From IMG/VR virus record IMGVR_UViG_3300027963_000035, positions 62,001 through 126,000 of that record: a stretch of DNA of 64,000 bases. One strand, 5' to 3'. Positions within the stretch are counted from its first letter, which is position 1. Each line of letters starts with the position of its first letter. The position numbers were made by a program, and so were the translations under genes. The notes beneath the pieces are model-generated. The model worked only from the letters and a program-made list of their open reading frames with translations, was not told where the DNA came from and did not search any database. Positions 32,118 through 57,735 of the stretch are shown in pieces.

Positions 32118-33809
32118 ATGAATAAAAATATTACCCTTGTCACAGGTCTTTGGGATCTTAATCGAGAAAGCTTAGACGGCTGGGCACAAAGAAACTTTAG
32201 CGACTACAAGGCCAGATTTTTTGAGATGTTGGAAGTTGATGCTCAAATGTGTATTTGGATTCCAAAATCTCTGGAGCAGGAGGTTTTGGATATAAGAAAG
32301 GATAAGCCAACAAGAATATATTTTAAAGAAAATGAAGACTTTAAAACTTGGAATCCTTTCTTTGATAAAATACAAGAAATAAGAAAAAATGAGGAATGGC
32401 TATCTAGAGCAGGTTGGCTTAGAGAATCCCCTCAAGCAGCGTTGGAATTTTACAATCCAATGATGTTCACAAAAATGTTCATGTTAAATGATTCGTCCAT
32501 TTACAATCCATTTAAATCTGATTATTTCTTTTGGATAGATGGAGGATTGACAAATACAGTCCACCAGGGAACTTTTACACATGATAAGGTTCTCGATAAT
32601 CTTGATAATTATTGTAAAATTCAAAAGAAGTTTGTGCACATAACATATCCATATACCGCTAACGATGAAATACATGGCTTTGAAAGAAATGCTATGGCAA
32701 AATATTGCGGTGTTAATTATGTAGATTATGTTGCAAGAGGGGGATTCTTTGGCGGAAGAAAAGAACTAGTATCTCAAATTAATAGCCTTTATTATGGGGT
32801 TATGGAATCAACCCTCAGAGAAGGGAATATGGGCGCAGATGAGTGTTTATTTACAATACTATGCCATAGGCACCCTGCTTTGATTCATAGATACGAAATA
32901 CCGGGAAACGGTTTAGTTTATCCTTTCTTTGAGAATCTTAAAGAATTTACAAACGAGAAGGTAAAAGAAAATAAATTAAATTGTCAATCAGATACAGATA
33001 ACACTGCGCTTTACGTAATAACTTTTAACAGCCCCAATCAATTTAGAACATTATTAAAAAGCATGGAAGCATACGACTCTGATTTTCTTATAAAACCCAA
33101 GAAAAGATTTCTTCTCAATAACTCAACAGACTTGTCGAAGAATGATGAATACATCAAACTATGTGAAGAATATAATTTCGAGCATATTAAAAAAGATAAC
33201 TTGGGGATATGTGGTGGCCGACAATTCATAGCAGATCATGCGGAACAAAACGAATTTGATTTTCATTGGTTTTTCGAAGATGATATGTTCTTCTATTCAA
33301 ATAAAAATGAACCTCTTTGTAAAAATGGCTTCAATAGAATAACAGAGAATCTTTATTCTAAGTCAATGGAAATAGCAAACAAAGAAAGTTTTGATTTTTT
33401 AAAATTAAACTATACTGAGTTTTTCGGAGACAATGGAACTCAATGGAGTTGGTATAACGTGTCCCAAGATGTCAGAGAAAAGTATTGGCCAAATAATAAA
33501 AAGCTTCCTCAATTAGGAACCGATCCAAATGCTCCTAAGACTGTTTATAATAACATAAAAAGTCATCGAGGAGTTCCGTATACAAATGGAGAAGTTTACT
33601 ATTGCAATTGGCCCCAAGTAGTCTCCAGAGAAGGAAACAAAAAAATGTTTTTAGAAACTACTTGGGCTCATTCATACGAACAAACTTGGATGAGTTATAT
33701 TTACCAAGAAACTAAAAAAGGTAATATTCAAGGTGGACTTTTGCTCATGACACCAACCGAACACAATAGATTCGAACACTACTCGGCAGAATTAAGAAAA
33801 GAATCTTGA
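32118..33809 (+). CDS. HtrL/YibB-like domain fused to a GT-A glycosyltransferase-like domain
   Basis: ITLVTGLWDL, MFTKMFMLND...NPFKSDYFFWIDGG, ARGGFFGG, ADECLFT (HtrL/YibB-like); second domain with WFFEDDMFF DxD-type motif. Confidence 0.65.
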   Translation: MNKNITLVTGLWDLNRESLDGWAQRNFSDYKARFFEMLEVDAQMCIWIPKSLEQEVLDIRKDKPTRIYFKENEDFKTWNPFFDKIQEIRKNEEWLSRAGWLRESPQAALEFYNPMMFTKMFMLNDSSIYNPFKSDYFFWIDGGLTNTVHQGTFTHDKVLDNLDNYCKIQKKFVHITYPYTANDEIHGFERNAMAKYCGVNYVDYVARGGFFGGRKELVSQINSLYYGVMESTLREGNMGADECLFTILCHRHPALIHRYEIPGNGLVYPFFENLKEFTNEKVKENKLNCQSDTDNTALYVITFNSPNQFRTLLKSMEAYDSDFLIKPKKRFLLNNSTDLSKNDEYIKLCEEYNFEHIKKDNLGICGGRQFIADHAEQNEFDFHWFFEDDMFFYSNKNEPLCKNGFNRITENLYSKSMEIANKESFDFLKLNYTEFFGDNGTQWSWYNVSQDVREKYWPNNKKLPQLGTDPNAPKTVYNNIKSHRGVPYTNGEVYYCNWPQVVSREGNKKMFLETTWAHSYEQTWMSYIYQETKKGNIQGGLLLMTPTEHNRFEHYSAELRKES

Positions 33810-33851
33810 AATAAAATATATTAATTGTTATAATACAAAAAAGGAAAAATA

Positions 33852-34715
33852 ATGAGTGAAAAATTATTGACTATCGGAATGGCGACCTATGATGATTATG
33901 ATGGAGTGTATTTCTCTCTCCAAGCACTTCGCATGTATCACGAAGTATGCAACACTGATCAGGTTGAATTTTTAGTCATAGATAATAACCCAAAAGGTAA
34001 ACATGCCGAACCGGTTAAATCTTTTGTTAATAGTTGGGCCAGAGGAAGATATATCCCATATGAAGAAAAGAAAAGCACTGCAGTAAGAAATGAAATATTC
34101 AAGCAAGCAAAGGGCAAGTATACCATATCAATGGATTGCCACGTTTTATTTCAAAAGGGTGCAATAGAAAGTCTTTTGAAATATTATGAACAAAACCCTG
34201 ATTGCAAAAACATAGTTCAGGGACCTCTTCTTTATGACGATTTGCGAAATGAATCTACAAGCTTTTCTCCGGTCTGGAATCATTCCATGTATGGGACCTG
34301 GCACACAGATCATGAAAACTTGAAAAAAGGTGAGCCTTTTGAGATTCTCATGCATGGTCTTGGTGTTTTTTCATGCGAGACCAAGAATTGGGTCGGATTC
34401 AACCAGCACTTTAAGGGATTTGGCGGAGAAGAAGGTTATATTCATGAAAAATTTAGAACACGTGGGGGCAAAGCAATTTGTATCCCTCAATTAAAGTGGG
34501 TTCACCGGTTTGGTAGGCCCGAAGGCGTTAAATACCCTCTTGTTCTAGAGGATAGAATTTGGAATTATTTTGTAGGTTGGCTTGAATTAACATGCAACCC
34601 GGAACATGAAATGATAAAAGGAGCTTACAATCACTTCAAAGATAAGATACCTGCGGGAAGCATAGACAAGATTCTAAACAATGCTAAAAAGCTGGTCCTA
34701 GAATCACCAGGCTGA
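33852..34715 (+). CDS. Glycosyltransferase, GT2-like (GT-A fold)
   Basis: LTIGMATY, EFLVIDNNP, RNEIF..AKGKYTISMDCH, FKGFGGEEG. Confidence 0.82.
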   Translation: MSEKLLTIGMATYDDYDGVYFSLQALRMYHEVCNTDQVEFLVIDNNPKGKHAEPVKSFVNSWARGRYIPYEEKKSTAVRNEIFKQAKGKYTISMDCHVLFQKGAIESLLKYYEQNPDCKNIVQGPLLYDDLRNESTSFSPVWNHSMYGTWHTDHENLKKGEPFEILMHGLGVFSCETKNWVGFNQHFKGFGGEEGYIHEKFRTRGGKAICIPQLKWVHRFGRPEGVKYPLVLEDRIWNYFVGWLELTCNPEHEMIKGAYNHFKDKIPAGSIDKILNNAKKLVLESPG

Positions 34716-39412: not shown

Positions 39413-42285
39413 TCGCTAAATGATACCGCTTCCTCCATAGATTTGGAGGCAGCCTTTGCTATTAAATTCTTAATTTCTTCATCTATTTTATTTGCTTCTA
39501 CTTGAGTATCAATTAGCTTCTGTAGCAGCTTTTCATCGGCCTGAACATCTTGGTATTCTTTTCTGTATCTTTGGATAATTTCTGCAAGCTTCCTTTTACG
39601 CTGAACTGCTTCATAGATTTCGGTGTCTAGACCCGGTGCTAGTGTATAATCTATCTTAACGGAGTGGTTGGTGTTGATTCTGTATATTCTTCCCTCACTC
39701 TGCTCAGAGCTTTCAGGAGTCCAATCAAAGTCATTGACGATCATATTCTGAGCTGCGTTGGGAAAACTTATCCCAGTTCCACCCATTTTCATACTCATTA
39801 CAAGTGCTTTTGCATTGGGATCATTTGTAAATAGTTCTTTAACCTTTTCTCTTTCTGCTTTCTTTGTGCTAGAAAGGTATGTTATTACTTTAAAATTAGG
39901 ATTAATTTCTTTTAATTTAGCTGATAACTTGTTGTTTATTTGTTCGCCGGATTGAACGAAGTTTGTAAATATGACAACTTTACTTGCTGCGTAATTGTTT
40001 TCTGATTTTTCTTTATTTGAATTTATTATTTTCAAGGCTTTATCTACTGTGGAATCCACCTTTAGATGAGCAAGGATTTCTCTTGAGGCTATTAATTCTG
40101 ATATTGCTAAATTGGGATCCTTATAAGCCTTGAGTTTTTCTTTTAATTTTTTACTAAATTCTGATGTGTCTACGTCAGTTGTGTATGCATTAACTTCAAG
40201 ATTGGGCATTTCTCTTAATTCATTCTTTGTTCTTCTGACATAGACTCCCGATAGATTTAACCATCGATTTAGTTTCTCAGCGGCTTTGATCTTATCTCTA
40301 AATGTTCCTTCAATATAACTTCCACCATAACCACCGGGCACCATGCCCGCAAAATCTTTTTTAAACTTTCCTTCTTTTATGGAGCCGAGTGGGTGGCCGA
40401 TCATAATCAATTGATTCTTTACGTCCATAGGCTTGTTTGCACTTATTGTTGCACTGGCGCCCCATTTATAAGGTATGTTCTGAGTTGCGACGAGTATGTT
40501 CTGGCTTCTTTTGGACGTGCTGTGTTTTAGTTTGTGAAGTTCATCAAATATTGCTATTTCAAAATTTGTCCCGCTGACTGACTTGACAACATTATCCACT
40601 TGTTTTCCACTTGAAAAATTGTCGTAGTACAGAACGGTCCACTTCTTTGGATTCAATGCATCAGTTGAGATTTCGGATTTATCTCCTACAACATTTTTTA
40701 TCTCATCTACCCACTGCTGTTGAACCGATTTCAATGTAATCACAAGAGTTTTTGCGCCAGGAGTGTCTTGCATCTTCAACTCCGCAGCACTTATAAGCAT
40801 TGCAGTTTTTCCATATCCTGTTTCATCACCAAGTATTGCGTGATGTCTGCCGTACAAGAAGGTCACTCCATCTTTTTGCTGATCATATAATTCAAACTTA
40901 GATTCAGGTAGTTTTTCTTCTATTTTATCTTTTAATCCTTCTGGAACTTCCCCTTCGTATTTTGTCTTTTTGACTCCGCCATTTTTAAGTTTAGTTTGTA
41001 GGATTAGTTTAAGACTATTTGGGTTCTGCGTGTAATTGTCTGTTATTTCAAACATGTAACCGAATTTTTTAAGTGTTGCACCAAAAGATACATATTGTTT
41101 AAAATTACCCCTAACGATATAAGAATAGTTGTCTCTATCCCATTCGTAATTTGGAAATGTGTATTGCACAAGTTCCCTAAGGAACTCTTTTTGTTGAGGA
41201 GATACTCTTGTGTATAATATTTTTATATGAAGTTTATCGTCTCTTCCCTTGGAAGGATCTGTAAACTCTATTCTCTCACTGGCAGGCGCACTCTCGGATC
41301 CTTTTGTTGGTTTTTCTTCTTCTGAAGGATCGTCCGCAGATTGAACTGATAATTGATTCTTTTCCACAAAATCATCTATTGGTTTGGCATCTATTCCAAA
41401 TTCACTGAACTTTTTGATTACTTGGTCGTGAATCTTTCTATCCAATGATAATAAGAATCTTGTTGGGTTTCTTTCGTATGCCATTCCACTTGGAGAAAGT
41501 CCTGCTGCCTTAACCGCATCAAATAAGGCTTTACTTTTTTCAAACGGAACATTAAACTGTATGGCAAGCCTTTTGCCATATCTCTGGGTTTCTTCTACTC
41601 CTATAACATTAACATCTGAGGATGATCCGGTGTTTATTCCCGGGGCGGCAACTGCAGCCGATGCTCCTATTTTTTTAACGCCTATCTTTTTCTCACCCGC
41701 TACTAGTTCCACTATCTCATCAATGACTTCGGGCGAAACATAGTATGTATCTAGTGTGTTTTTATCTTGACTGAAGTATCGCCATGCTTCATATTGATGT
41801 TTTCCAAATTTATTTAAAGTTTTTTGGAGATTCTTTTTTTGTACTATTATCGCTTCTATTCTCCTGGATAGAGCTTTATCTATGCCTCCGGGAATTAAAA
41901 CTTTCACCTTGCCGTATTGTTTAGGAGCATTGTTATCAATTGTTATTTTGTCATCTTCTTGATCATGGAGCGACAATGAGTCTTTTATGTCTTTATTAAC
42001 TGCTGCCTTGATATCTTCATAATGAGTTACTTGGGTCTTTTTATATCTGTTTAATATTGATAAAATATTATTTGCCATTGCAACGGGTATGGTGTCTTCA
42101 TGATATTTTGGATCGCTAGTTATTCTCTTAAAAGACATAAAATCAGGCTTATTAAATCCTGTATCATCATATTCTACTGGGGCTCCTCTGCTGAACATTC
42201 CATCAAATGTGGATTTAAGCAATTGTATGCCAGGACCACCGACAAGATTTTCTTGATTCTCTACATAATTTTTAAATAAACTCAT
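39370..42285 (-). CDS. SNF2-family helicase/ATPase with a long N-terminal extension
   Basis: LYDQQKDG (Q motif), GDETGYGKT (Walker A), IFDELH (Walker B), SAT, KVVIFTNF, GGTGISF, DFDWTP...QSEGRIYR; N-terminus MSLFKNYVENQE. Confidence 0.9.
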   Translation of the reverse strand: MSLFKNYVENQENLVGGPGIQLLKSTFDGMFSRGAPVEYDDTGFNKPDFMSFKRITSDPKYHEDTIPVAMANNILSILNRYKKTQVTHYEDIKAAVNKDIKDSLSLHDQEDDKITIDNNAPKQYGKVKVLIPGGIDKALSRRIEAIIVQKKNLQKTLNKFGKHQYEAWRYFSQDKNTLDTYYVSPEVIDEIVELVAGEKKIGVKKIGASAAVAAPGINTGSSSDVNVIGVEETQRYGKRLAIQFNVPFEKSKALFDAVKAAGLSPSGMAYERNPTRFLLSLDRKIHDQVIKKFSEFGIDAKPIDDFVEKNQLSVQSADDPSEEEKPTKGSESAPASERIEFTDPSKGRDDKLHIKILYTRVSPQQKEFLRELVQYTFPNYEWDRDNYSYIVRGNFKQYVSFGATLKKFGYMFEITDNYTQNPNSLKLILQTKLKNGGVKKTKYEGEVPEGLKDKIEEKLPESKFELYDQQKDGVTFLYGRHHAILGDETGYGKTAMLISAAELKMQDTPGAKTLVITLKSVQQQWVDEIKNVVGDKSEISTDALNPKKWTVLYYDNFSSGKQVDNVVKSVSGTNFEIAIFDELHKLKHSTSKRSQNILVATQNIPYKWGASATISANKPMDVKNQLIMIGHPLGSIKEGKFKKDFAGMVPGGYGGSYIEGTFRDKIKAAEKLNRWLNLSGVYVRRTKNELREMPNLEVNAYTTDVDTSEFSKKLKEKLKAYKDPNLAISELIASREILAHLKVDSTVDKALKIINSNKEKSENNYAASKVVIFTNFVQSGEQINNKLSAKLKEINPNFKVITYLSSTKKAEREKVKELFTNDPNAKALVMSMKMGGTGISFPNAAQNMIVNDFDWTPESSEQSEGRIYRINTNHSVKIDYTLAPGLDTEIYEAVQRKRKLAEIIQRYRKEYQDVQADEKLLQKLIDTQVEANKIDEEIKNLIAKAASKSMEEAVSFSDYLKILELGFNADT

Positions 42286-43012
42286 GATGAAATATATATG
42301 AGTTTAATTTGAATTTTGGCCTCAAAACTTTTCTTTTAACATTTTTAAATTTTAGTAATCTTTCCCAATTATGTGTGTATGTATGGAATATTATCGCATC
42401 CATATATTCAAAGTCATTGATATTTTCTGGTATCTTAACATGATTTCTTTTAAAATAATTTTTATTTATATTATCATCATGAACTATTTGACTCATTAGG
42501 AATTCTTCCCTCACCCATTTATTATATCTCTCAAGCCAAACCCATAGTTCGGGGTGGGTTTCTTTTATTTTATTGAGCTTATCATTAAAGTCTTTGTATA
42601 TTTTTTTGTTAGATCCATTTCTAAACAATAGCACGCCTGAATTAATGGGCTTAAATAATTTAAAGTCTGCACTATAGGCCCACTTGTTCTCACAGCCCAC
42701 AATATCTTCTGGGTATTTATTTATTATTTTTTCTATATCATCAAATATAAAAGTGTCACTATCTATGTAAAATATATTGTCAAAGTCCAAATCGGCTAGA
42801 TATTGTTTGTTTGCTGGGAAGTATTCTGGGTCTATGTTCTTCACATACTTTGTTTCAACCATCAATTCTTCTGGAAACATGGTCTCATCATGTGTGCAAA
42901 AACATATTATTCTTATATTTTTGTTGAATTTTCTAAGCATTTTGATGCTATTAAGAGCCATTTTATGGTAATTTAGATTACCGTTTATTATGTAAACTAC
43001 CACAGAAGTCAT
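42272..43012 (-). CDS. Glycosyltransferase, GT8-like
   Basis: MALNSIKMLRKFN, FYIDSDTFIF (DxD), INSGVLLF, IIFH. Confidence 0.72.
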   Translation of the reverse strand: MTSVVVYIINGNLNYHKMALNSIKMLRKFNKNIRIICFCTHDETMFPEELMVETKYVKNIDPEYFPANKQYLADLDFDNIFYIDSDTFIFDDIEKIINKYPEDIVGCENKWAYSADFKLFKPINSGVLLFRNGSNKKIYKDFNDKLNKIKETHPELWVWLERYNKWVREEFLMSQIVHDDNINKNYFKRNHVKIPENINDFEYMDAIIFHTYTHNWERLLKFKNVKRKVLRPKFKLNSYIFHHEFI

Positions 43013-43033: not shown

Positions 43034-44368
43034 TCAAGGACTTCCGCCATCTATATCCCCCCAAACTGGGTAGTTACCTTCGATCACCAATACTTTTCCC
43101 GGAGATCCTAGTCCGGCATTTGATATGCTATTTAGATTTTGACTATATGGCATGGCATCTGTTATCCCATAGCCAGCGAGAGTGGTTGGATTTGATCCTC
43201 CTACAACTCTACCATAATAATCCACTATGACCTTTGAATAAGGGCCGGAAACTAATCCGGGTATGACGGCTAGATCAATACCAGAAGGAGTTACGACTAT
43301 CCTACCCAGAGTTCCTCTGGCCGAAAAAGAATTCCCAGTCCTAGTCAACCCATCTCCAGCAGTTAATTGGTTGGCTCCATTAAACAAACTAAAGACTAAA
43401 TCTGTTACTCCCAAGTTGATGGTGTCGTTGGTTATTAACAGCCAACCAGTGTCCATATTTGCTGTGCCCTCTGACGCAAAGACAAAAAGTCCAGTAGTAA
43501 CATTATTGTTAGAATTAGCGTCAGAAGATCTCGCCCAGGCGCCTATTTTAACATCATATATTCCGTTTTCATATGGAAGAATTTGATTCTTAACCAACAC
43601 CCTGTCGCCAGCTACTAAAGAAATATTATCTATTGTTTGAAGACCGGTTAGATTTATATCAGCCGTTGTTGCAGCCCTGACAGATTGCTTTATATCAAAA
43701 CTTCTTCTTGAATTATCGACATATTCTTCGGTTGCTATTTTTTTATTATTTGAATAGAAACTTCCCGATGATCTTATATCCCCGACTGAAGTTAATGCCC
43801 CGGTTAAAGATAGATGTCCCAATCCAGACAAATTTAAATTACTATCGACAAATAATGGTTTATTTACGGTGGCTGTTCCTGGAGTTACCTCGTGAAGATA
43901 GTTTAATTCTGCTGCCGTCGAATTAACAGTAACAGATCCAACCCTAAAAGTCCCAGTTATATCAACCATACCAGCAAATGTATTGCTATACTGTGAGGCA
44001 AATACATTGTTTTGATTTTTTCTCGCATATTGTTCGAGTATTGCTGACCCGCCCACTGCCCCTGTTGCACCTGTAAGGCTCGACCTGGTTATAATTTCAT
44101 CATCGTTTACATACGCTTTACCTGTTCCGTTGGGCCGAAGGTATATATTTCCATTAACATCCTGAGAACTTATTGTGTTGCCATTTACGTAGATATTATC
44201 GAATTGTTTAGAAGAATAGGGAAGATTGTTCCATCGAGATATTCCATTGCCTGTTTTCTTTCTATTTGTGTCTGTTTCTAGGCCCTCTTCCCCCTCAAGA
44301 AGCAAAGGATTAACCAGTGCCCAGTTAGACGATAATGCTCTTTTTAATTGAATTAATGTATCGGCCAT
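43034..44368 (-). CDS. Tail fibre-like protein (Mtd-N/hyaluronidase-type N-terminal domain)
   Basis: IQLKRA...W...NPLLLEGE.GLETDT...KTGNG...WNNLPY; KQSVRAATT..I.LTGLQTID...GDRVLVKNQ...NGIY; VIVDYYGRV....PTTLAGYGITDA fibre motifs. Confidence 0.8.
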   Translation of the reverse strand: MADTLIQLKRALSSNWALVNPLLLEGEEGLETDTNRKKTGNGISRWNNLPYSSKQFDNIYVNGNTISSQDVNGNIYLRPNGTGKAYVNDDEIITRSSLTGATGAVGGSAILEQYARKNQNNVFASQYSNTFAGMVDITGTFRVGSVTVNSTAAELNYLHEVTPGTATVNKPLFVDSNLNLSGLGHLSLTGALTSVGDIRSSGSFYSNNKKIATEEYVDNSRRSFDIKQSVRAATTADINLTGLQTIDNISLVAGDRVLVKNQILPYENGIYDVKIGAWARSSDANSNNNVTTGLFVFASEGTANMDTGWLLITNDTINLGVTDLVFSLFNGANQLTAGDGLTRTGNSFSARGTLGRIVVTPSGIDLAVIPGLVSGPYSKVIVDYYGRVVGGSNPTTLAGYGITDAMPYSQNLNSISNAGLGSPGKVLVIEGNYPVWGDIDGGSP

Positions 44369-46728: not shown

Positions 46729-46729
46729 A

Positions 46730-47950
46730 ATGACAGAAAAAATTAATTTTATAGAAAGTGCCGTTTATGGAAGTAAGGATGTCACAGATATACTTAATGA
46801 TAAAATAAAGAAAGGATTATCTTTTGTATTAGTGGGAAATGATTTATTTGGAGATCCTACTCCCGGAGTATTTAAATATCTAGATTTAATTCACGACGGC
46901 AAAAAATTAAAGATCCCAGAAAATCAAACTTTAATTTTAAGTGATCATGTGTTGGAGGAAGAGGGTGATAAAAGCGTAATAGTTGTCATATTTTGTTGGG
47001 CAGTAAATGATTGGAAAGATAGACTTATCGCAAAGATAAATAGAATGATAAATTCTGGATTGTATGACGCTGCCGATGAGATTTATTTAACCATAACGGA
47101 TACCAACAATCAAGAAGAAGACATAAGAACAACTTTTAATAAATATAATAAATTAATAATAGAATACCACACAGATAATATACCAGAATATTGGGGAATA
47201 AAGAAAATAGATGATTTAGGAAAAACTAGAAATAATACAAATTTATTATACAGTCATGTAAAAGGTGTTTATAATAAATTTAAGAATTTTTCAACGAAAG
47301 AAATATCTCAACAAAAAATAAACAGCATAAATGACTGGGCTGAATCACTTGATTACTTCACAATTGATAGGTGGAAGGATTGTGTTGATAAATTAAACAA
47401 TGGATTCGATACAGTTGGCGTCACAAATATATTTGGCTGGTGGTGGGGTAATTTTTGGTGGACCAAATCTTCTCATATAAAGAAAAACATAGAATACAAA
47501 TACAGGGATAGGTGGTATGGAGAGGCGTGGCTACATGAGGGCAACATAAGTCCAAGCGAAATAAAGAAATATGAGATGTGGCACTATGAGTTTGATCCAC
47601 AAGGAACCGACTGCCCTAGATTTTTTTATGATGGATCATATTCATTTGAAGAAAAAAAACCAGAAATTATTTCAGCGTTTTTTGGTTTTGATGGTATCCA
47701 GCGAGATGAAGCCCAGCCACCAGGTCCTGAAAATTTAGTCGATGTTACAAATAAAGTTAAAGATTTGATCTCGGAAAAAGAGTTGAGTTTTGTTGCCGAT
47801 GAGCATGTTTTGTGCATATCTGACCCCAGTATAAATTCATTGCCTCCACACAATAAATGTTTAATAATAAACTATAAACTACCTGATATACCAGATAGAA
47901 CATTTAGATTAAAAACTTTTTCTGGGTTCAGGACAAAAATAGGTTGGTGA
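46730..47950 (+). CDS. Putative glycan-modifying protein: lectin-like N-terminal domain and a glycosyltransferase-like core
   Basis: SAVYG.KDVT...FGDPTPGVFKYL; LLYSHVKGV...DW...W.DCV.KL..GFDTVG...GNFWWTKSSHI; degenerate lectin-like repeat at the C-terminus. Confidence 0.55.
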   Translation: MTEKINFIESAVYGSKDVTDILNDKIKKGLSFVLVGNDLFGDPTPGVFKYLDLIHDGKKLKIPENQTLILSDHVLEEEGDKSVIVVIFCWAVNDWKDRLIAKINRMINSGLYDAADEIYLTITDTNNQEEDIRTTFNKYNKLIIEYHTDNIPEYWGIKKIDDLGKTRNNTNLLYSHVKGVYNKFKNFSTKEISQQKINSINDWAESLDYFTIDRWKDCVDKLNNGFDTVGVTNIFGWWWGNFWWTKSSHIKKNIEYKYRDRWYGEAWLHEGNISPSEIKKYEMWHYEFDPQGTDCPRFFYDGSYSFEEKKPEIISAFFGFDGIQRDEAQPPGPENLVDVTNKVKDLISEKELSFVADEHVLCISDPSINSLPPHNKCLIINYKLPDIPDRTFRLKTFSGFRTKIGW

Positions 47951-51018: not shown

Positions 51019-51552
51019 ATGAATTTGGAATCGTTTGATTTTGATATCAACAAATATAAAATTGAAGACAATTCTTCTAAGACAAAGAAAAAGAAGCGAA
51101 AATATTACCCATTATATGAAAACTATGATAATGGCAGTGAAAAGTATTACAAGAGAATAGTGGATGAAGATCCTGTTTGGGATGGTACTCGAATCTTTTT
51201 CATGAATGACACTGGCTATCTTTCTTACTTGATGAAGCATCCTTTATTGAAGAAGTTTCAAAATATAGATTGCACCGTTTTTGAATCTAAGAATACAAGT
51301 AAACTGGACATTGATTTCGCCAAATTCAAGCCCGATATAATTGTTGCTGTCGGTAAGTCCGCACCATTTGCTCTCAAATTGAATGATAAGATCCCTGTCG
51401 TGCTAGTTGATCCCGAAGGATTTTTCATGGACGAAGAACGCAAGTCAATCATCCTGAACTCTAAGAGAGACATATACGACCAGCTAAGGACTATTATTGA
51501 CTTCATAGAGACAGATGTTTCACCAGACAAATATCCTCTTTATGCTTTTTAA
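51019..51552 (+). CDS. Hypothetical protein
   Basis: 177-aa ORF; no longer ORF on the opposite strand; KPDIIVAVG...IPVVLVDP alpha/beta-like segment. Confidence 0.5.
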   Translation: MNLESFDFDINKYKIEDNSSKTKKKKRKYYPLYENYDNGSEKYYKRIVDEDPVWDGTRIFFMNDTGYLSYLMKHPLLKKFQNIDCTVFESKNTSKLDIDFAKFKPDIIVAVGKSAPFALKLNDKIPVVLVDPEGFFMDEERKSIILNSKRDIYDQLRTIIDFIETDVSPDKYPLYAF

Positions 51553-52646
51553 TTTTTTCGGATTAATATCCACTTGTTTTTATTGATTTCTAATAATTCT
51601 ATATTTTCTTTAATATTGTCTGTGATCTCTGAGCCGGGATAGATTTCAAATATTCTGTCTCTGTACAAATCGGAATCGGGAATATATGCCAAACCATTTT
51701 CTTTTAAAGAAGATATGTGTTCTCTGAATACAGCCTCTTCAGGTTGATGTTCTAGATTATAATCAAAATTATAAAACATCAATCTGGACAATGCCCCCTC
51801 CCCAAATGGGCAGCATTGCCTGTGTTCATATTGGCATCTTGTTTGACCCGTATAATATTCCCAATTATAAATATCTTTTTCATAAGAATACCAAAATGGT
51901 GTTCCTCCCCAATCCCAATTCCAAGTCTTGACGGGGAATAGTTTTCCAAAATTTGCGGGACTGTTCACCACAACTTTTCTATCTACTGGATTTCCGCCAT
52001 AGTAATAATCTAATATATTATTTACAAAATATTGTCTTTTGCCATTTGTGTAATGAATAGAGAATAGTTTTTCACCAAGTATGTAAAAACAAGATAATAA
52101 ATTAGTGACTTTTGTTTTAAACTTTTTAATTGCTAAAAAATTAAAAAAAGCAATATCTTCTAATGTTATATTTGAGGTATTTTCAAATTTTATAAATTCT
52201 CGACAAACTTCTTTGGACATTAAAATTCCACCGCCGCCACCAAATTTTGCCCTCAATACATCGAATCCTTCCATCTCCTTCATTAAATCATCTATCACGT
52301 AATGATTTAAATAAGATCCATCGTCTGTCCTGAATATGTAATCAAACTCTTCGTTTTTTAACGACCATAGTACAGCCTCTTTCAATCTTTCAATCATAAA
52401 CGACCCCAGTCCAGTATTGGGATAGTCGTAAGATTCATTAGCTATTAAGTGTAGTATCTTGTTGTCTTTATCATAAGATACTTCTTTGTTGCCTCCATCA
52501 AAAAATATCACTTTGTGGCCCAAAGACTCTATTTTTGGGACCCATGTCTCTAAACAAGACATTTTTCGTGTCAGTCCAGGATTCTCTATTTTAATCCCAC
52601 TCCCATTATAATATTTGCTAGTATAGGCTAAAAAAAGTATTTTCAC
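51549..52646 (-). CDS. Glycosyltransferase, GT31/Fringe-like
   Basis: CLETWV, FDYIFRTDDGSYLN, GGGGILMS, LEDIAF, FSIH. Confidence 0.68.
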   Translation of the reverse strand: MKILFLAYTSKYYNGSGIKIENPGLTRKMSCLETWVPKIESLGHKVIFFDGGNKEVSYDKDNKILHLIANESYDYPNTGLGSFMIERLKEAVLWSLKNEEFDYIFRTDDGSYLNHYVIDDLMKEMEGFDVLRAKFGGGGGILMSKEVCREFIKFENTSNITLEDIAFFNFLAIKKFKTKVTNLLSCFYILGEKLFSIHYTNGKRQYFVNNILDYYYGGNPVDRKVVVNSPANFGKLFPVKTWNWDWGGTPFWYSYEKDIYNWEYYTGQTRCQYEHRQCCPFGEGALSRLMFYNFDYNLEHQPEEAVFREHISSLKENGLAYIPDSDLYRDRIFEIYPGSEITDNIKENIELLEINKNKWILIRKN

Positions 52647-52689: not shown

Positions 52690-54078
52690 ATGACAGACAC
52701 ACTAAGAACAAGAACAGATATATTATCCTTATTTTACAATAATTCTTCTGGCGATATATCCGCCCAGGATATGAGAGATTTTGTAACTAGTATTTTCTTA
52801 TCTGCCGATAATCAATTGGTAATAGGCTCTTTGAATACAAGTGACCTTGGTGCGGATCAAAGTGGAATCAAGGTAAATGCGGCAACCCCTAAAACCATAT
52901 TATTCGACTATACCAAACATTCTTGGACAAGTAGTGAAAGCTTTAATTTAAGTCTTTATAAGTCATATAAAATTGATGGGGACTTAGTGTTGGATCAATA
53001 CTCCCTGGGAGATACCGTTAGTTATTCTAAACTAACGCAAGTCGGAACCATTCTCTCTGGCACGTGGGAAGCCACCCCAGTTGATGTTTCTTGGGGAGGA
53101 ACAGGCAGATCATCTCTTAATCTAGGCAGCTTCTTAGTCGGTGATGGAGCCAATCCGGTAAGTGTAACAGACGATGTTGTTTGGAGTAAATCGGAAAAAT
53201 CTCTTCATGTTAAGGGCTATGTATCTATAGAGAATAATAGTGATCCGTTCTCAGAAAATCAGAATTCAATAATTTTAGAAAAAAGAAACAATCTATCTAA
53301 AAGCATAACGTACTCGGGCACGGCAACAACAATTGGAAATAGCGAAAAAACTTTTTTTGAATTTGATGTCCCTGATAATCTTTTGGCCAAGTTTAGAATA
53401 TCATGTAGCGGCACTAACTTCGACAGAAATGCCGCAATATCATCTGATATAGAAGTGACATATAGGAGATCAATAAACCCTGATACTCCATTAAGTCCAA
53501 CTCAATACATATATCTTGTGGGCGAAGAAAATAAATCATTAAATACTGATAATGACGATTGGGATGTTAACATTAGAGTTGAAGATGATAAGATTAGATT
53601 AAAGGTTTTGGGGAGCGATGTTAATTGGATAGCTGAAATAGATGTTCACTTCATGTACACTCCGACAGTTACTACAACCACGATTGGCCCGACCACAACC
53701 ACACTAGAGCCGACAACCACAACCACGACCACCACAGGACCAACAACAACCATGGCACCAACCACTACCACAACCACTACGACAACAACTGTTTTCTTGA
53801 ATACATCTATTACTACTGTGTTGGGGGCAAATCCCCTATCACCTAGTTACTGGTTCGTGGAATCTACTGGGGTCACAGTAACATCGGAAAGCGAAACTAT
53901 ATTTGAGTTTAATGCTTTAAGTAGCTCGGGAATTCCATATAACATGGATATTAAAGCAGAAGGAATTTTAATAGCTTCTGTGTCTTTTTCTCCAAGCTAC
54001 TTATCTTTGCCATTTAGAATCACAAAATCAGGAAGCACTTATTCTGGATTTTTTACAAATGGCGACGTGAATTTTTAA
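52690..54078 (+). CDS. Putative virion fibre/structural protein with a Thr-rich linker
   Basis: 462 aa; TPVDVSWGGTG fibre-like motif; TTTTIGPTTTTLEPTTTTTTTTGPTTTMAPTTTTTTTTTT linker. Confidence 0.6.
   Translation: MTDTLRTRTDILSLFYNNSSGDISAQDMRDFVTSIFLSADNQLVIGSLNTSDLGADQSGIKVNAATPKTILFDYTKHSWTSSESFNLSLYKSYKIDGDLVLDQYSLGDTVSYSKLTQVGTILSGTWEATPVDVSWGGTGRSSLNLGSFLVGDGANPVSVTDDVVWSKSEKSLHVKGYVSIENNSDPFSENQNSIILEKRNNLSKSITYSGTATTIGNSEKTFFEFDVPDNLLAKFRISCSGTNFDRNAAISSDIEVTYRRSINPDTPLSPTQYIYLVGEENKSLNTDNDDWDVNIRVEDDKIRLKVLGSDVNWIAEIDVHFMYTPTVTTTTIGPTTTTLEPTTTTTTTTGPTTTMAPTTTTTTTTTTVFLNTSITTVLGANPLSPSYWFVESTGVTVTSESETIFEFNALSSSGIPYNMDIKAEGILIASVSFSPSYLSLPFRITKSGSTYSGFFTNGDVNF
53658..53790 (+). repeat. 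Poly-Thr/Pro low-complexity coding tract
   Basis: ACN-rich coding run seen directly. Confidence 0.8.
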
Positions 54079-54111
54079 TTTTATGTGCTTCACTTTGAGG
54101 TTAGAACTAAA

Positions 54112-57096
54112 ATGATAATTAATAAATTATATCAAATAATAAGTTCAAGAGAAAGTTATAATCTATCCGGTTTATCTCAAGTCGATATAGTATATGGAGA
54201 ATCCGCTAGTGGCAATAATCTTTTATCTTGGACCCCAACAGGACTTCCTGGATTTAGTACGTTGGGTCCTGAAAAATCATACATAATAAAAAATGCAAGT
54301 AATTTTTCTGATTATATTTTGAATATTAATTCAAATTCTCCTGATCAAAGTGGAGCTATAAATAAAAAATTTCAATTTATTACCTACAAAGCGGAATCTA
54401 ATTTTAATATTTCCAACCTTTCATCCGAAGTAAAGAATAGGATCACCGCAATTATTGCAGAATCCCCCAGTGGAAATAATTTGTTATCTTGGACGCCCAG
54501 TGGATTTCCTGGCTTTTCTCAGCTTGTTTGTGGAAAAACATACCTTGTAATAAGCAGGTCAAATAATTTTTCTCCTTATGATTTAGATTTGCCTCCCCCT
54601 CAAGTCTCATATCCAGTGTCCGCCTATTATGTTGGTGGATATTTTAGATTAAAAAATCCAAACACAAACAACTACACCTCTAATTTATCGTCTTCTTATT
54701 TTTATGAATCAGATATTGGTGACTATAATCTAATTGATAGAAAATTTTCCGGAACATCATTTGACTTTAATTATTCTAACTCAATCGATAAAGCAAAAGA
54801 AGACTTTCCCGAATTCACAGAAGTTGATTATGCATCATTTGAAGTTGTGTTAATTGACTCTTCTAGTAAAGTTGTCGGATGGGCCACCACTAGCACAGAT
54901 GCAGCAGAAGTTCCTACTCATGGAGCCGGGGGTTCTTATTTAAATATAAGATTATTTGATTTTCCAACAATATATGATGAAGAATCTTGGACATTGGGAT
55001 CCTTATCCAGCGGACCTTCTTCTATTGTTTTTAATAATATTAGTCCATATAAGATATTATCCCCCTCTGTTGTTTCCACCCCTACTCCCACGCTTACTCC
55101 CACGCTTACTCCCACATTAACCCTAACACCAACTCTCACAAGAACAAATACTAGAACCCCAACTGCAACACTTACAAGCACACCTACGCTAACAAGTACT
55201 CAGACGCTCACTTCAACTAATACTCAAACTCCAACTTTAACCTCAACCAACACTCAAGCATCTACTCCCACTTATACTCCTATTCCGACAAATACTCCAA
55301 CTTTAACAATAACCCCCACACTAACAGAGACTCCAACTTTAACAAGTACTCCCACACTAACAGAGACTCCAACTTTAACAAATACCCCCACATTAACAGA
55401 AACTTCTGCCCCAACGAATACTCCTACTCCTACGAATACTCCTACTCCTACGAATACTCCTACATTAACAAACACACAAACATCAACAAGTACTCCTACA
55501 CTAACTCCCACAATAAGTTTAACAAACACCAATACTCAAACACCAATTAAAACCAGTACTCCGACTTTAACAAATACTCCTACACTAACAGAAACTCCCA
55601 CTTTAACTAGTACTCCCACTTTAACAAATACTCCGACAATAACTGGCACTCAAACCCTGACCAGTACTCAAACATTAATTTTAACTCAGACGGCAACCTT
55701 AACAAGCACTCCAACACTCACTCCGACTTTAACTCCCACACTAACTAATACTCCTACTTTAACGGGAACTCCAACTTTAACTAGTTCTCAAACACCGACC
55801 AATACTAGCACTCCTACACAAACTAGTACCACAACATTAACTAACACTCCAACTTTAACATTAACTAGCACTCCAACTTTAACCAACACTAGAACATCAA
55901 CTAATACTCCAACATTAACTAACACCAAAACATTAACTAACACTCCAACATTAACTAGAACCAACACCAGAACTCCCACCAATACTCAAACTCCTACTTC
56001 AACTAAAACCCCAACATTAACCCAAACAGTAACAGGCACATATTTGTCTTCTGTTAATGGGTTAGTTCTACATCTAGATGCCGGGGATATATCGAGTTAC
56101 CCTGGCACTGGCTATGTGTGGAGAGATCTTAGCGGTCTTGGTAATCACGCAACACTCATAAGTCAGCCAATTTATAGTGCTAATCATGGTGGAATTTTGA
56201 TATTTAATTCCAATAGCACCACTCAATGGGCGGAGGTTACCAACAATGCTTCGATCAATAATTTGAGCGGTGACTTTGCTTATGAAATATGGGTTTATCC
56301 AAAGAATGGAGGTTTTACTTATGGTAAAATCTTTGGTAAAGGAAAATACTCGGCGGGGGCCGGATTCAATGGTGTTTTAAACAATATAAATAGTAATACC
56401 ACCGAGTGGCAATACCAAGATGCCGGCGGCAATCCGATTTCTCTCTTGACGGACAGTACTGATTTTAATACTTGGGTTCATCTCGTATACACCAGAACTA
56501 AGGGCGTGTTTAGATTATATAAAAATTCAGTAAAAATGTTTACCGATAATAGCCCGTTGATAAATAATTATGACTTTAGTAGCAATTATCCTCTTAGAAT
56601 TGCAGCCAACAGCCAACCAGTTCCAGATTGGTCACAACAAAGAGTAGGGGTATTTAAACAATACAATAGGGGATTATCTGCAGTCGAGGTTCTTCAAAAT
56701 TTCGAGATGTTGCGAGGTCGTTATGATATACCCTTCCCGACACCAACTCCAACAAAAACTTTAACTCCTACACCTACAATCACATTGACGGCAACGCCCA
56801 CATATACGCCGAATGTTATTTTTACTGATCCTATTAATCTAAGATCAAGATATGGTGCACCAAGTACACTGGCGTGGGATCAGAGAAACCTAGACTATAT
56901 AGCCAGCATAGAATCACCTAGGAATTATAAAATATTATCCGTATCTCAAAAAGCACCCGGATCAGGAAATAAATCAAATTACACGAGTTGCGGAGACAAT
57001 AATCACTGTTATTGGAATGGAAGTGGCTGGACTTTGGTAGGTGCTTGCTCGTCCAACTGGATCGGCAGCATGACACTAACTAAGATTTGCTGTTAA
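54112..57096 (+). CDS. Mucin-like Thr/Pro repeat protein with LamG/concanavalin-like jelly-roll domain; putative fibre/adhesin
   Basis: Duplicated N-terminal module ([18 protein letters not shown] twice), about 320 aa of TPT/TLT repeats, [25 protein letters not shown] LamG signature; start moved to ATG 54112 (GAGG upstream). Confidence 0.75.
55075..56037 (+). repeat. Degenerate 6-residue (18-nt) T-P-T-L-T-x coding repeat array
   Basis: Recurrent actccaactttaacaaat-like units through the region. Confidence 0.82.
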
Positions 57097-57099
57097 TAA

Positions 57100-57735
57100 T
57101 TATTTGAAAAAAGCAACGATAGAGCAGCGGGCATTGGCCCCAGAATCTTCGTCTACTCTATTTATTTGATGCCAAACCCCACCTCTTGTTGCAACAATTC
57201 TGTTGGGCTTTGGTTGAATATAATACCCACATGCAACATAGTTCATTATTTTATCTGTCCACCAAGTCTCTAAAGGTCCGCCTACATTTTCCTTTTTATA
57301 CTCTATGTTTGGGGTCTCGGCCAACATTAACTCGCCACCCCATCCTGCTCCCCAATAGGGATGAGTATAAAATATAACTGCTGCTGTATAGCCAGTGTCG
57401 TTGTGCCAATTTATTTTAGTTCCTCTTCCATAGATATATGCTCTTAAAAAGACTTCTTTCCATTTGCCAAAAATTTCTGGATGGTTATTATTAATTTCGT
57501 TTATTTTTTCATAAACCTTATCAAGTGGGTTTTTGAATGGGTAATCTTTAGCATTATATTCCTTACTCCCCATGGGATTCCCGTCAGTCAATTTCCAAAC
57601 TTTCATGAATCCATTTGAGTTTATAGAAGAATAATCTATGGTTTGAAACCAATCCCACATAACTTTAAACTCTTCTGGAGTGAGGACGTTATCGTAGATT
57701 ACGAATTTATCTTCATTTTGTAATATTTTATCCAT
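57100..57735 (-). CDS. 2OG-Fe(II) oxygenase, prolyl-4-hydroxylase-like
   Basis: HxD (WHND), WGGEL, PKPNRIV, distal His (WHQI) and RxS (RCS). Confidence 0.85.
   Translation of the reverse strand: MDKILQNEDKFVIYDNVLTPEEFKVMWDWFQTIDYSSINSNGFMKVWKLTDGNPMGSKEYNAKDYPFKNPLDKVYEKINEINNNHPEIFGKWKEVFLRAYIYGRGTKINWHNDTGYTAAVIFYTHPYWGAGWGGELMLAETPNIEYKKENVGGPLETWWTDKIMNYVACGYYIQPKPNRIVATRGGVWHQINRVDEDSGANARCSIVAFFK

What the first reader, a model, noticed from the sequence alone, without database searches (positions are those of the whole stretch)
32118..57735. Candidate self-encoded virion glycosylation system: many glycosyltransferases interleaved with Thr-rich fibre genes
At least six GT-like genes (32118 HtrL+GT-A, 33852 GT2, 42272 GT8-like, 44443 GT34+2 methyltransferases, 46730, 51549 GT31-like) lie among fibre genes (43034, 52690, 54112), and three structural proteins carry long Thr/Pro tracts (about 14797-14856, 53658-53790, 55075-56037) that look like O-glycan acceptor sites. 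Virion glycosylation by phage-encoded GTs is known in some mycobacteriophages and in giant viruses; a multi-step, methyl-capped glycan on mucin-like fibres would go further. No sugar-nucleotide synthesis genes are in the window. Alternatives are DNA glycosylation or host-surface conversion.
Basis: partly seen in the sequence, partly recalled or inferred. Interest (0 to 1): 0.7.

Follow-up and report, generated by a model that had tools for sequence, protein, structure and literature searches.

The report
Megaphage mucin-type glycosylation of fibre proteins
A very large freshwater phage encodes a set of sugar-adding enzymes, one of them shaped like the animal enzyme that starts mucin glycosylation. 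In related phages these genes sit right next to genes for threonine-rich fibre-like proteins, so the phage most likely coats its own proteins with methylated sugar chains.

Summary
The window lies in a 251-kb fragment of a freshwater phage whose full genome is about 500 kb. It encodes six soluble GT-A glycosyltransferase genes, two sugar-type methyltransferase domains and three proteins with long Thr/Pro tracts. Nine such proteins lie on the whole contig.

- **w33852**, which Pfam calls GT2, folds closest to polypeptide GalNAc-transferases (GT27), the enzymes that start mucin-type O-glycosylation. It keeps a DxH motif.
- **w51549** has a GT31 fold, like core-1/Fringe enzymes.
- **Cassette in relatives.** The window's scattered GT31-like, GT34-methyltransferase, DUF8361-like and HtrL genes form one contiguous cassette in diverged relatives. 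There it is headed by a PF11397 enzyme (by my knowledge CAZy GT60, a polypeptide GlcNAc-transferase).
- **Neighbours.** A Thr-tract gene is the cassette's direct neighbour in 15 of 23 IMG/VR loci, against 0 of 80 control loci.
- **Rival pathways.** About 330 kb of this phage holds no hydroxymethylase, TET enzyme or lipid-carrier priming enzyme.

Glycosylation itself, the sugars used and the virion location are all inferred, not shown. I rate it a new variant of a known kind, with confidence about 0.6.

The parts
32118..33809 (+). HtrL_YibB domain (aa 4-258) plus a second GT-A-like domain. It is the most conserved member of the cassette.
   Evidence: Pfam E 1.2e-12. Homologues in L106-L108 match at E 1e-237. 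It is the last gene of the contiguous cassette in relatives.
33852..34715 (+). ppGalNAc-T-like GT-A enzyme (Pfam GT2) with D95-x-H97, FGGEEGY and H218. Proposed initiating transferase.
   Evidence: The AF2 model has pLDDT 95.8. The Foldseek PDB top 50 are all GT27. VIA gives Z 22.1 and 21.4 for GalNAc-T1 and TgGalNAc-T3 against 18.5 or less for other GT2 enzymes. The Swiss-Prot top 30 are all GALNT.
42272..43012 (-). GT8/Nucleotid_trans-like GT-A enzyme.
   Evidence: phrog_1962, E 5.5e-7. Atlas features 0.96-0.97 and TM 0.70-0.82 to GT8/Nucleotid_trans clusters. Its position beside the fibre gene is kept in L024.
43034..44368 (-). Tail-fibre-like protein with no Thr tract, transcribed divergently from the GT34 gene.
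   Evidence: Mtd_N, E 1.3e-5. Many tail-fibre PHROGs, E down to 1e-37. Synteny is kept in relatives of 63-72% identity.
44443..45087 (+). GT34/DUF273-like GT-A domain of the 761-aa protein.
   Evidence: Pfam E 2.2e-12. Weak match to PBCV-1 A64R, 2p6w, E 0.26. Two stretches pass the GT34 cut-off.
45139..45573 (+). Methyltransferase domain 1 (class I SAM).
   Evidence: Methyltransf_31, E 5.9e-14. tblastn hits mycobacteriophage methyltransferases that lie next to GTs after the capsid gene.
45853..46044 (+). Cys-free module, about 65 aa, resembling SUEL/rhamnose-binding lectins.
   Evidence: Shared by w46730 and g185042, E 1e-13 to 1e-15. Weak match to 5h4s, E 0.0049.
46045..46713 (+). Methyltransferase domain 2, a paralogue of domain 1. 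MycE/TylE-type sugar O-methyltransferase.
   Evidence: PDB 3ssm, E 1.3e-20, and 8ia9, E 1.8e-18. It is 48% identical to domain 1.
46730..47950 (+). Lectin-like module (46751-46942) plus a DUF8361-type GT-A domain (46976-47926).
   Evidence: 5h4s, E 6.3e-7. Atlas DUF8361 0.95, and TM 0.62 to a GT34 cluster. The GT part is homologous to the 322-324-aa cassette gene of relatives, E 1e-57 to 1e-72.
51549..52646 (-). GT31-like (Fringe / beta3-GT / C1GalT1-like) enzyme. It is the divergent neighbour of the Thr-tract gene w52690, 43 nt away.
   Evidence: The model has pLDDT 92.8. The top PDB matches down to C1GalT1 at rank 37 are GT31-type enzymes such as B3GalT6, B3GNT2, Manic Fringe and C1GalT1. 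Invariant D108-D109 and E163-D164, with T34-W35.
52690..54078 (+). Thr-tract structural-type protein. The tract is at 53629-53853.
   Evidence: phrog_6002 'virion structural protein', E 4.6e-13. Its ortholog in L133 has a longer tract and still abuts the GT31-like gene.
54085..57096 (+). 1003-aa modular protein with a 340-aa (T-x)n tract (55042-56061) and a second tract (56719-56835).
   Evidence: phrog_8510 'virion structural protein', E 1.4e-12. It is 94% identical with 10 gaps in the 98%-identical relative.
13501..15780 (-). Thr-tract protein inside the baseplate module, with YHYH domain. The tract is at 14761-14889.
   Evidence: YHYH, E 4.6e-30. Baseplate-wedge and virion-structural PHROGs, E 1e-36 to 1e-95.

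Best explanation
The phage encodes a cytoplasmic, mucin-type protein O-glycosylation pathway. Its acceptors are the long Thr/Pro tracts of its own large modular proteins, which are fibre-, baseplate- or decoration-like.

Proposed steps, all inferred from folds and families:
1. **Initiation.** The ppGalNAc-T-like enzyme w33852 puts a first sugar, probably a HexNAc, on tract threonines. In most related phages a PF11397 enzyme (by my knowledge CAZy GT60) holds this place.
2. **Elongation.** The GT31-like w51549, the GT34-like domain of w44443, the DUF8361-type w46730, the two-domain HtrL protein w32118 and the GT8-like w42272 extend the chain. Lectin-like modules on two of these enzymes may hold them on the growing glycan.
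3. **Capping.** The two sugar-type O-methyltransferase domains of w44443 methylate the chain.

Nucleotide sugars would come from the host or from the unsequenced part of the genome. The result would be mucin-like, methyl-capped glycoprotein stalks on the particle. Their role (shielding, stiffness, protease resistance or adhesion) is open.
For: **Shown by tools**
- All six GT genes are real.
- w33852 is closest in fold to GT27 in three searches, over its full length. D95-x-H97, FGGEEGY and H218 are invariant in 40 homologues.
- w51549 has a GT31 fold and motifs.
- The C-terminal methyltransferase matches the deoxysugar O-methyltransferases MycE and TylE, E 1e-20.
- In 6 of 6 metagenome loci and 19 of 23 IMG/VR loci the cassette PF11397 / GT31-like / GT34-MT / (DUF8361-like) / HtrL is contiguous.
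- Thr-tract ORFs occur in 19 of 23 cassette loci against 13 of 80 control loci (P 6.6e-9).
- A Thr-tract ORF is the direct neighbour in 15 of 23 against 0 of 80 (P 1.2e-12). After removing duplicate loci this is 9 of 15 (P 4.3e-9). Density is 8.9 against 1.4 per 100 kb.
- A 340-kb distant relative has neither tracts nor the core enzymes.
- Neither the enzymes nor the tract proteins have a signal peptide or membrane segment, so they share a compartment.
- GT and fibre genes carry the same TATATA-like box 5-14 nt before the ATG.
- The methyltransferase's relatives in mycobacteriophages lie with GTs right after the capsid gene.

**From the literature**
- GT60 enzymes initiate mucin-type O-glycosylation in protists (PMC8724618).
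Against: - No glycan has been observed, and every enzymatic step is inferred.
- w33852 is not a GT27 or GT60 member by sequence. The profile against GalNAc-T7 gives E 0.12, and hhalign against the PF11397 proteins gives E 0.015 over the DxH region only. GT-A folds do not fix the acceptor.
- No PF11397 gene was found in about 330 kb of this phage.
- In this phage the cassette is scattered among unrelated genes.
- The TATATA-like box also precedes helicase, CCA-enzyme and nuclease genes.
- Virion location rests on PHROG domain labels and gene position only. The relatives' tract proteins get no structural label.
- Some cassette loci have no tract gene in the flanks held (L142, L144, L145).
- Loci in the statistics are related by descent, so the P values overstate independence.
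- Profile hits of w33852 also include the wall-teichoic-acid transferases TarP and TarS.
- HtrL and GT8 families are classically linked to LPS.
Confidence: 0.6

Rival explanations
1. The enzymes remodel host envelope glycans (LPS, capsule, teichoic-acid-like polymers or host glycoproteins) during infection, for example to block superinfection. The Thr tracts are then plain flexible linkers.
For: - HtrL_YibB, and by my knowledge GT8 and GT2, are common in LPS and cell-wall pathways.
- The w33852 profile hits TarP and TarS.
- Large cyanophages with 13 GTs are interpreted this way in the literature (PMC12801897).
Against: - None of the GTs has a membrane segment.
- About 330 kb holds no Bac_transf or WecA-type primase.
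- This idea does not explain why Thr-tract genes are the cassette's direct neighbours.
- It does not explain the GT27-like fold or the PF11397 enzyme in relatives.
Confidence: 0.15
2. The enzymes do glycosylate the Thr-tract proteins, but these proteins are not part of the particle. They could be released or intracellular phage proteins.
For: - Several tract proteins carry adhesin-type modules with no virion label: DUF5122 propeller, fn3, and CotH with a lamin-tail domain.
- The relatives' tract proteins get no structural PHROG.
Against: - w13501 lies inside the baseplate module and matches baseplate and virion PHROGs.
- w52690, w54085 and g126234 match 'virion structural protein' PHROGs.
- None has a signal peptide.
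- In L106 the cassette lies beside a crAss ring protein gene.
Confidence: 0.12
3. The enzymes glycosylate hydroxymethylated bases in the phage DNA, as in T-even phages or TET-associated systems.
For: The second domain of w32118 gives weak hits to TAGT (19 bits, under the 27.5 cut-off) and to phrog_842.
Against: - No ThyA-type hydroxymethylase was found in about 330 kb.
- No Tet_JBP match was found either, but that search's controls did not ring, so this negative is weak.
- The enzyme families here (GT27-like, GT31, GT34, and PF11397 in relatives) are not known DNA glycosyltransferases (my own knowledge).
- It offers no reason for the adjacency to tract genes.
- The genome is only about 64% covered, so this is not excluded.
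Confidence: 0.04

Closest known systems
Mycobacteriophage virion glycosylation (Che8, Corndog, Myrna; Freeman et al. 2023, cited in PMC12619734; details from my own knowledge)
   Same: Phage-encoded GTs, with methyltransferases beside them, modify the phage's own structural proteins in the cytoplasm. The methyltransferase domain here is 26-36% identical to those phages' methyltransferases, which lie next to GTs after the capsid gene.
   Different: In the mycobacteriophages the acceptors are short C-terminal tails of capsid and tail-tube subunits. Here they are internal tracts of 40 to 340 aa in fibre-like modular proteins. The enzyme families also differ: GT27-like, GT31, GT34, DUF8361 and HtrL here. 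The phage is a freshwater phage of about 500 kb with an unknown host.
Eukaryotic mucin-type O-glycosylation (GT27 ppGalNAc-Ts or GT60 pp-GlcNAc-Ts, then the GT31 core-1 synthase)
   Same: There is an initiating enzyme of GT27-like fold with DxH, and a PF11397 enzyme in relatives. A GT31-fold enzyme is present. The acceptors are dense Thr/Pro repeats.
   Different: The enzymes are cytoplasmic and soluble, with no ricin lectin domain and no Golgi anchor. No significant sequence similarity to GT27 was found. Further GT34, HtrL and methyltransferase steps have no counterpart in mucin synthesis.
Chlorovirus PBCV-1 A064R (two rhamnosyltransferase domains plus a 2-O-methyltransferase acting on the capsid glycan; my own knowledge)
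   Same: A multidomain viral protein joins a GT-A domain to a sugar methyltransferase, giving methyl-capped glycans on a virion protein. There is a weak sequence match to A64R domain 1 (2p6w, E 0.26).
   Different: The match is not significant. The PBCV-1 glycans are N-linked on the major capsid protein. The domain order and the duplicated methyltransferase with a lectin-like insert are peculiar to this phage.
Mimivirus fibril glycosylation (my own knowledge)
   Same: A large virus-encoded set of many GTs decorates surface fibres with methylated, bacterial-type sugars.
   Different: Mimivirus also encodes the nucleotide-sugar pathways. None were found here. The enzymes and acceptors are unrelated.
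Cytoplasmic Skp1 hydroxyproline glycosylation (Gnt1, GT60) in protists
   Same: A soluble cytoplasmic GT60-type enzyme starts a short glycan that further GT-A enzymes then extend (PMC8724618). PF11397 enzymes head the cassette in relatives.
   Different: There it acts on one hydroxyproline of one protein. Here it would act on long Thr/Pro repeats. Only a weak 2OG-oxygenase-like hit turned up, in relative L024.

Membership tests
GT27 polypeptide GalNAc-transferases (for w33852) | GT-A catalytic domain closest in fold to GT27 over its whole length | tested here: met
   The Foldseek PDB top 50 are all GT27, TMq 0.63-0.73. VIA gives Z 22.1 and 21.4 with 266 and 259 of 287 residues aligned, 3-4 Z units above other GT2 enzymes. 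The Swiss-Prot top 30 are all GALNT.
GT27 polypeptide GalNAc-transferases (for w33852) | DxH metal motif plus a later His and a Gal/GalNAc-T-type GGE motif | tested here: inconclusive
   D95, H97, G191-E193-E194 and H218 are invariant in 40 homologues. Their equivalence to GT27 residues was judged from motif order and spacing, not from a residue-level superposition.
GT27 polypeptide GalNAc-transferases (for w33852) | Significant sequence similarity to GT27 members | tested here: not met
   phmmer finds no PDB match. The profile gives only GalNAc-T7 at E 0.12, while TarP scores 5.7e-7.
GT27 polypeptide GalNAc-transferases (for w33852) | C-terminal ricin-type lectin domain and type II membrane anchor | tested here: not met
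   The protein is 287 aa, a catalytic domain only, with no hydrophobic segment.
PF11397 / CAZy GT60 polypeptide GlcNAc-transferases | Match to the PF11397 model | tested here: not met
   No match in G000 or G001 by HMM or phmmer. hhalign of w33852 against the family gives E 0.015. It is met in relatives, E 1e-68 to 1e-72. The equation of PF11397 with GT60 is from my own knowledge.
GT31 (Fringe, beta3-GTs, C1GalT1), for w51549 | GT-A fold nearest to GT31, with a DxD-type motif and an ED motif | tested here: met
   pLDDT 92.8. The top PDB matches down to C1GalT1 at rank 37 are GT31-type enzymes, E 1e-7 to 2e-5. Invariant D108-D109 (DDG), E163-D164 and T34-W35.
GT31 (Fringe, beta3-GTs, C1GalT1), for w51549 | Match to the Pfam Galactosyl_T or Fringe models | tested here: not met
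   No Pfam hit for the protein or for any of 49 homologues.
GT34 (for the w44443 N-terminus) | Match to Glyco_transf_34 over the curated cut-off | tested here: met
   47.7 bits against a cut-off of 23. Two stretches pass the cut-off.
MycE/TylE-type sugar O-methyltransferases (for the w44443 C-terminus) | Significant sequence similarity to characterised members | tested here: met
   3ssm, E 1.3e-20, and 8ia9, E 1.8e-18, over aa 525-693. Metal and substrate residues were not examined.
SUEL / rhamnose-binding lectin domain (module in w44443, w46730 and g185042) | Domain-length similarity and the conserved disulfide cysteines | tested here: inconclusive
   5h4s scores E 6.3e-7, but the matched stretch is only about 23 aa. 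No Pfam Gal_Lectin hit. The cysteines are absent. The fold was not modelled.
Mycobacteriophage-type virion glycosylation | Glycans shown on capsid or tail-tube C-termini, made by GTs encoded in the structural module | not testable with these tools
   Only gene content and context can be read. The acceptors proposed here are internal tracts of other proteins.
Phage DNA glycosylation (T-even GTs, TET-associated TAGT) | A hydroxymethyl-pyrimidine source (ThyA-type hydroxymethylase or TET/JBP) plus a DNA GT | tested here: not met
   PF00303 is absent from about 330 kb. PF12851 gave no match, but the search's controls did not ring. The TAGT hit is 19 bits, under the 27.5 cut-off. The genome is incomplete.
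Host-surface glycan conversion (Gtr-type or O-antigen/capsule type) | Membrane-embedded GT or flippase, or a lipid-carrier priming transferase | tested here: not met
   None of the GTs has a membrane-like segment. No Bac_transf or Glycos_transf_4 match. GtrA and Wzx/Wzy were not searched.

The most novel reading that the evidence does not exclude
A widespread lineage of freshwater megaphages, with contigs up to 513 kb, carries a eukaryote-like mucin-type O-glycosylation pathway. It would run from ppHexNAc-transferase initiation (GT27-like or GT60) through GT31 extension and GT34/HtrL/DUF8361 elongation to O-methyl capping. With it these phages would build true mucin-like glycoprotein fibres in the bacterial cytoplasm. 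The variable tailoring genes next to the GT34 gene would give strain-specific glycan 'serotypes'. These enzymes may share ancestry with, or have been exchanged with, those of giant viruses and protists.
Probability: 0.4. Interest if true: 0.85.

Novelty: new variant of a known kind. Interest (0 to 1): 0.75.

Why it matters
Virion glycosylation by phage-encoded enzymes has been shown only in some mycobacteriophages. Among large viruses it is known from chloroviruses and mimiviruses.

If this reading is right:
- Mucin-like O-glycoproteins are made in bacterial cytoplasm by a common group of environmental megaphages.
- The enzymes resemble those that start and extend mucin glycans in eukaryotes.

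That would:
- extend where mucin-type glycosylation is known to occur;
- offer soluble, compact ppHexNAc-transferase-like enzymes and matched TPT-repeat acceptors for glyco-engineering in bacteria;
- give a concrete, testable function for the many unexplained glycosyltransferases of huge phages;
- identify a probable determinant of particle stability, adhesion or recognition in lakes.

The cassette-plus-tract signature can also be searched for directly in metagenomes.

Tried and rejected
- **Complex prediction.** Folding w33852 with a 40-aa tract peptide gave no verdict. It counts neither for nor against.
- **RNA evidence.** No RNA sequencing run was listed for w32118-34715, so expression could not be checked.
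- **Motif discovery.** An EM motif search drifted to an A-rich motif. It was replaced by k-mer and regex counts.
- **Uninformative searches.**
  - PDB sequence searches gave nothing for w32118, w42272, w51549 and w33852.
  - A megablast against known phages found nothing.
  - PHROGs gave no structural label for the relatives' tract proteins.
  - The contexts of two w33852 homologues showed a T4-like fragment with GT32-like and sulfotransferase genes, and a 1.6-kb contig.
- **Moraphages.** I considered membership in the aquatic jumbo 'moraphages', which have four core GT groups (PMC12619734). I could not test it. Their genomes reach 307 kb, whereas this lineage has contigs up to 513 kb.
- **GT2 count.** The number of GT2 genes does not track the Thr tracts. 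A 340-kb relative has five GT2 hits and no tracts. I therefore dropped 'many GTs' as an argument and used only the core cassette.
- **DNA glycosylation and host-surface conversion** are kept as low-probability rivals.

Full report
**What the sequence is**

The window is bases 62,001-126,000 of a 251,265-bp IMG/VR virus record that CheckV rates about 50% complete. It uses the standard code and is 91.6% coding. It is a tailed phage. Baseplate-wedge and virion PHROGs lie at w13501-21136.

Its baseplate wedge protein has over 1,000 homologues at 61-89% identity, on contigs up to 513 kb. At least 550 related IMG/VR loci exist. A 98%-identical relative of 323 kb (G001) extends the sequence available to about 330 kb. 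Near-identical DNA occurs in many freshwater and lake metagenomes from 2017 to 2025.

**Check of the observation**

All six GT-like genes are supported:
- **w32118** matches HtrL_YibB over cut-off. A second GT-A-like part has only sub-threshold hits.
- **w33852** matches Glycos_transf_2.
- **w42272** matches a glycosyltransferase PHROG and GT8/Nucleotid_trans clusters in the Atlas.
- **w44443** has a GT34/DUF273 domain, a class I methyltransferase, a lectin-like module of about 65 aa, and a second methyltransferase. That second domain matches the deoxysugar O-methyltransferases MycE and TylE at E 1e-20. The two methyltransferase domains are 48% identical.
- **w46730** carries the same lectin-like module plus a DUF8361-type GT-A.
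- **w51549** has no HMM hit, nor do its 49 homologues. Its alignment shows ETW, FRxDDGSYVN and ED motifs. A confident model (pLDDT 92.8) finds GT31-type enzymes as its top PDB matches, down to C1GalT1 at rank 37.

Six more tract proteins lie elsewhere on the contig. The tract proteins are modular, with these domains:
- YHYH
- LamG
- DUF5122 propeller
- fn3
- CotH with a lamin-tail domain

A second group of glycan genes lies outside the window, at g167-186 kb:
- two GT2 genes
- two methyltransferases
- a weak sulfotransferase
- a paralogue of w46730
- a third lectin-module protein

**The initiating-type enzyme**

w33852 belongs to a very large family, with 1,046 clusters at E under 1e-30. D95-x-H97, FGGEEGY and H218 are invariant in the 40 sequences aligned.

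Its model (pLDDT 95.8) is nearest to polypeptide GalNAc-transferases in three searches:
- The first 50 Foldseek PDB matches are all GT27.
- An independent aligner run over 48,161 representative chains puts mouse GalNAc-T1 (Z 22.1) and Toxoplasma GalNAc-T3 (Z 21.4) first. They cover 266 and 259 of 287 residues, and generic GT2 enzymes follow at Z 18.5 or lower.
- The first 30 Swiss-Prot models are all GALNTs.

By sequence it is not a GT27 or GT60 member. I say it looks like, and may work like, a ppHexNAc-transferase. I do not say it is one.

Some homologues are fused to PqqD-type peptide-recognition domains, GT25 domains and sulfotransferases.

**The cassette in relatives**

In relatives of 63-72% identity the window's gene order is kept. 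The genes just after the GT34-methyltransferase differ, however, and include a GT6-like gene and a weak 2OG-oxygenase-like gene. That stretch therefore behaves as a variable tailoring island.

In six more distant metagenome loci (GT31-like gene 34-51% identical) the scattered genes form one same-strand cassette:
1. a PF11397 'GlcNAc' transferase
2. the GT31-like gene
3. the GT34-methyltransferase
4. sometimes the DUF8361-type gene
5. HtrL

The order of the middle genes varies in one locus, L109. The PF11397 match is strong, E 1e-68 to 1e-72. By my own knowledge PF11397 corresponds to CAZy GT60. GT60 enzymes are polypeptide GlcNAc-transferases that start mucin-type O-glycosylation in protists (PMC8724618).

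No PF11397 gene is found in about 330 kb of this phage. There, w33852 follows HtrL directly, so a functional replacement is plausible but unproven.

**Link to the Thr tracts**

All six metagenome loci have a Thr-tract ORF within 10 kb, and in three it abuts the cassette.

A scan of IMG/VR with the GT31-like alignment gave 23 loci. The control is 80 baseplate-centred loci of the same lineage with the same flank length, 1,056 kb in all.

| Measure | Cassette loci | Control loci | One-sided Fisher P |
|---|---|---|---|
| Any Thr-tract ORF | 19 of 23 | 13 of 80 | 6.6e-9 |
| Tract ORF is direct neighbour (8-66 nt) | 15 of 23 | 0 of 80 | 1.2e-12 |
| Direct neighbour, duplicates removed | 9 of 15 groups | 0 of 80 | 4.3e-9 |
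| Tract ORFs per 100 kb | 8.9 | 1.4 | not tested |

In several cassette loci a tract ORF flanks the cassette on both sides. The loci are related by descent, so these P values overstate independence. Even so, the pattern holds across GT31-like identities of 35-99% and across different tract proteins.

A conserved protein of about 280 aa follows HtrL in many loci. It has a constant N-terminal domain, then Thr blocks, then a variable C-terminus.

A distant 340-kb relative (GC 47.8%, 41 of 352 proteins shared) has no tract proteins and none of the core enzymes, yet it has five GT2 hits. It is therefore the core cassette, not the number of GTs, that goes with the tracts.

**Alternatives**

- **DNA glycosylation.** No ThyA-type hydroxymethylase is present in about 330 kb. 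No Tet_JBP match was found either, though that search's controls did not ring.
- **Host-surface conversion.** No Bac_transf or WecA-type primase is present. None of the GTs or tract proteins has a membrane-like segment or signal peptide.
- **Sugar supply.** No Epimerase or NTP_transferase family gene was found. Relatives do carry NTP_transferase and epimerase-like genes near the cassette. Sugar supply here must come from the host or from the missing part of the genome.

**Regulation**

Two upstream motif classes exist on the contig. A long motif, GTTTCCCTCCGGTACGGT, precedes about 60 small minus-strand genes at g146-247 kb. A TATATA-like box lies 5-14 nt before the ATG and is enriched at g25-125 kb. 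The GT genes and the fibre and baseplate genes of the window share the second class. So do helicase and nuclease genes, so this is only weak support.

**Verdict**

The best reading is a phage-encoded, cytoplasmic, mucin-type O-glycosylation of the phage's own Thr-tract proteins, with methyl capping (confidence about 0.6).
- **Shown:** gene identities, folds, cassette structure and adjacency statistics.
- **Inferred:** acceptor, sugars, order of steps, virion location and biological role.

It is a new variant of a known kind, virus-encoded glycosylation of virion proteins. It differs from the mycobacteriophage and giant-virus cases in its enzymes and its acceptors.

Noticed in passing
G000 146,000-247,500 (outside the window); one copy at window 50951: A long conserved motif, (A)GTTTCCCTCCGGTACGGT, occurs about 60 times. 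Almost all copies are on the minus strand, 10-70 nt upstream of small genes. It looks like the promoter of an early-gene block, perhaps read by a phage-specific polymerase or sigma factor.
   Followed up: partly
window-wide, e.g. 13, 8 and 6 nt upstream of w32118, w52690 and w13501: A TATATA-like box peaks 5-14 nt before start codons. It occurs at 50-60% of genes in g50-125 kb, against 9% in coding controls. This suggests near-leaderless transcripts of a second promoter class.
   Followed up: partly
L024 19490-22435: In a 72%-identical relative the GT31-like gene is split into two pieces. An inserted serine-resolvase plus TnpB (Cas12f1-like) element, IS607-like, lies between them.
   Followed up: partly
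window 46045-47950 compared with L024 11300-15900: The genes just downstream of the GT34-methyltransferase core differ between close relatives. Here they are a lectin module, a second methyltransferase and a lectin-GT. In L024 they are a longer C-terminus, a 213-aa weak 2OG-oxygenase-like protein, a 313-aa protein and a GT6-like protein. It behaves as a variable glycan-tailoring island.
   Followed up: partly
window 45853-46044 and 46751-46942; G000 185675-185870 (minus strand): A Cys-free module of about 65 aa (AxYGGKDV...GDPxPGVFKxLxV) is shared by three glycan enzymes. It resembles the conserved core of rhamnose-binding (SUEL) lectins.
   Followed up: partly
window 39370-42285: The SNF2-family helicase gene between the GT8-like gene and upstream genes is present here and in one relative but absent from L024. 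It is therefore an insertion/deletion polymorphism inside the region.
   Followed up: no
G000 248354-250708 (L014:16354-18708, minus strand): A Thr-tract protein combines a CotH kinase domain with a lamin-tail domain, an unusual pairing for a phage protein.
   Followed up: no
homologues P0294 and P0297 of w33852: Some members of the w33852 family are fused to PqqD-type peptide-recognition (RRE) domains, GT25 domains and sulfotransferase domains. This hints at peptide substrates elsewhere in the family.
   Followed up: no
L134, L135, L139, L147-L152 and L154, directly downstream of HtrL: A conserved protein of about 280 aa has a constant N-terminal domain (MDFFIKKNATLPVLKLQVV...), TTTTTT blocks with Cys pairs, and a C-terminus that differs between loci. 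It is a candidate dedicated acceptor and has no homologue in this phage outside the tract.
   Followed up: partly
window 54085-57096 compared with L025 7990-10968: The 1003-aa tract protein is 94% identical with 10 gaps in the otherwise 98-99% identical relative. The tract region therefore changes faster than its neighbours.
   Followed up: no
window 34704-35909, 48304-48753 and 50479-50931: A CCA-adding/poly(A) polymerase-family enzyme is present although the window holds no tRNA gene. A CAP (cysteine-rich secretory protein) domain protein and a phosphoribosyltransferase are also present.
   Followed up: no
Atlas clusters for w46730, w51549 and w42272: The nearest Atlas clusters are labelled partly Nucleocytoviricota and partly Uroviricota. 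Either giant viruses and megaphages share these GT families, or megaphage contigs are mislabelled.
   Followed up: no
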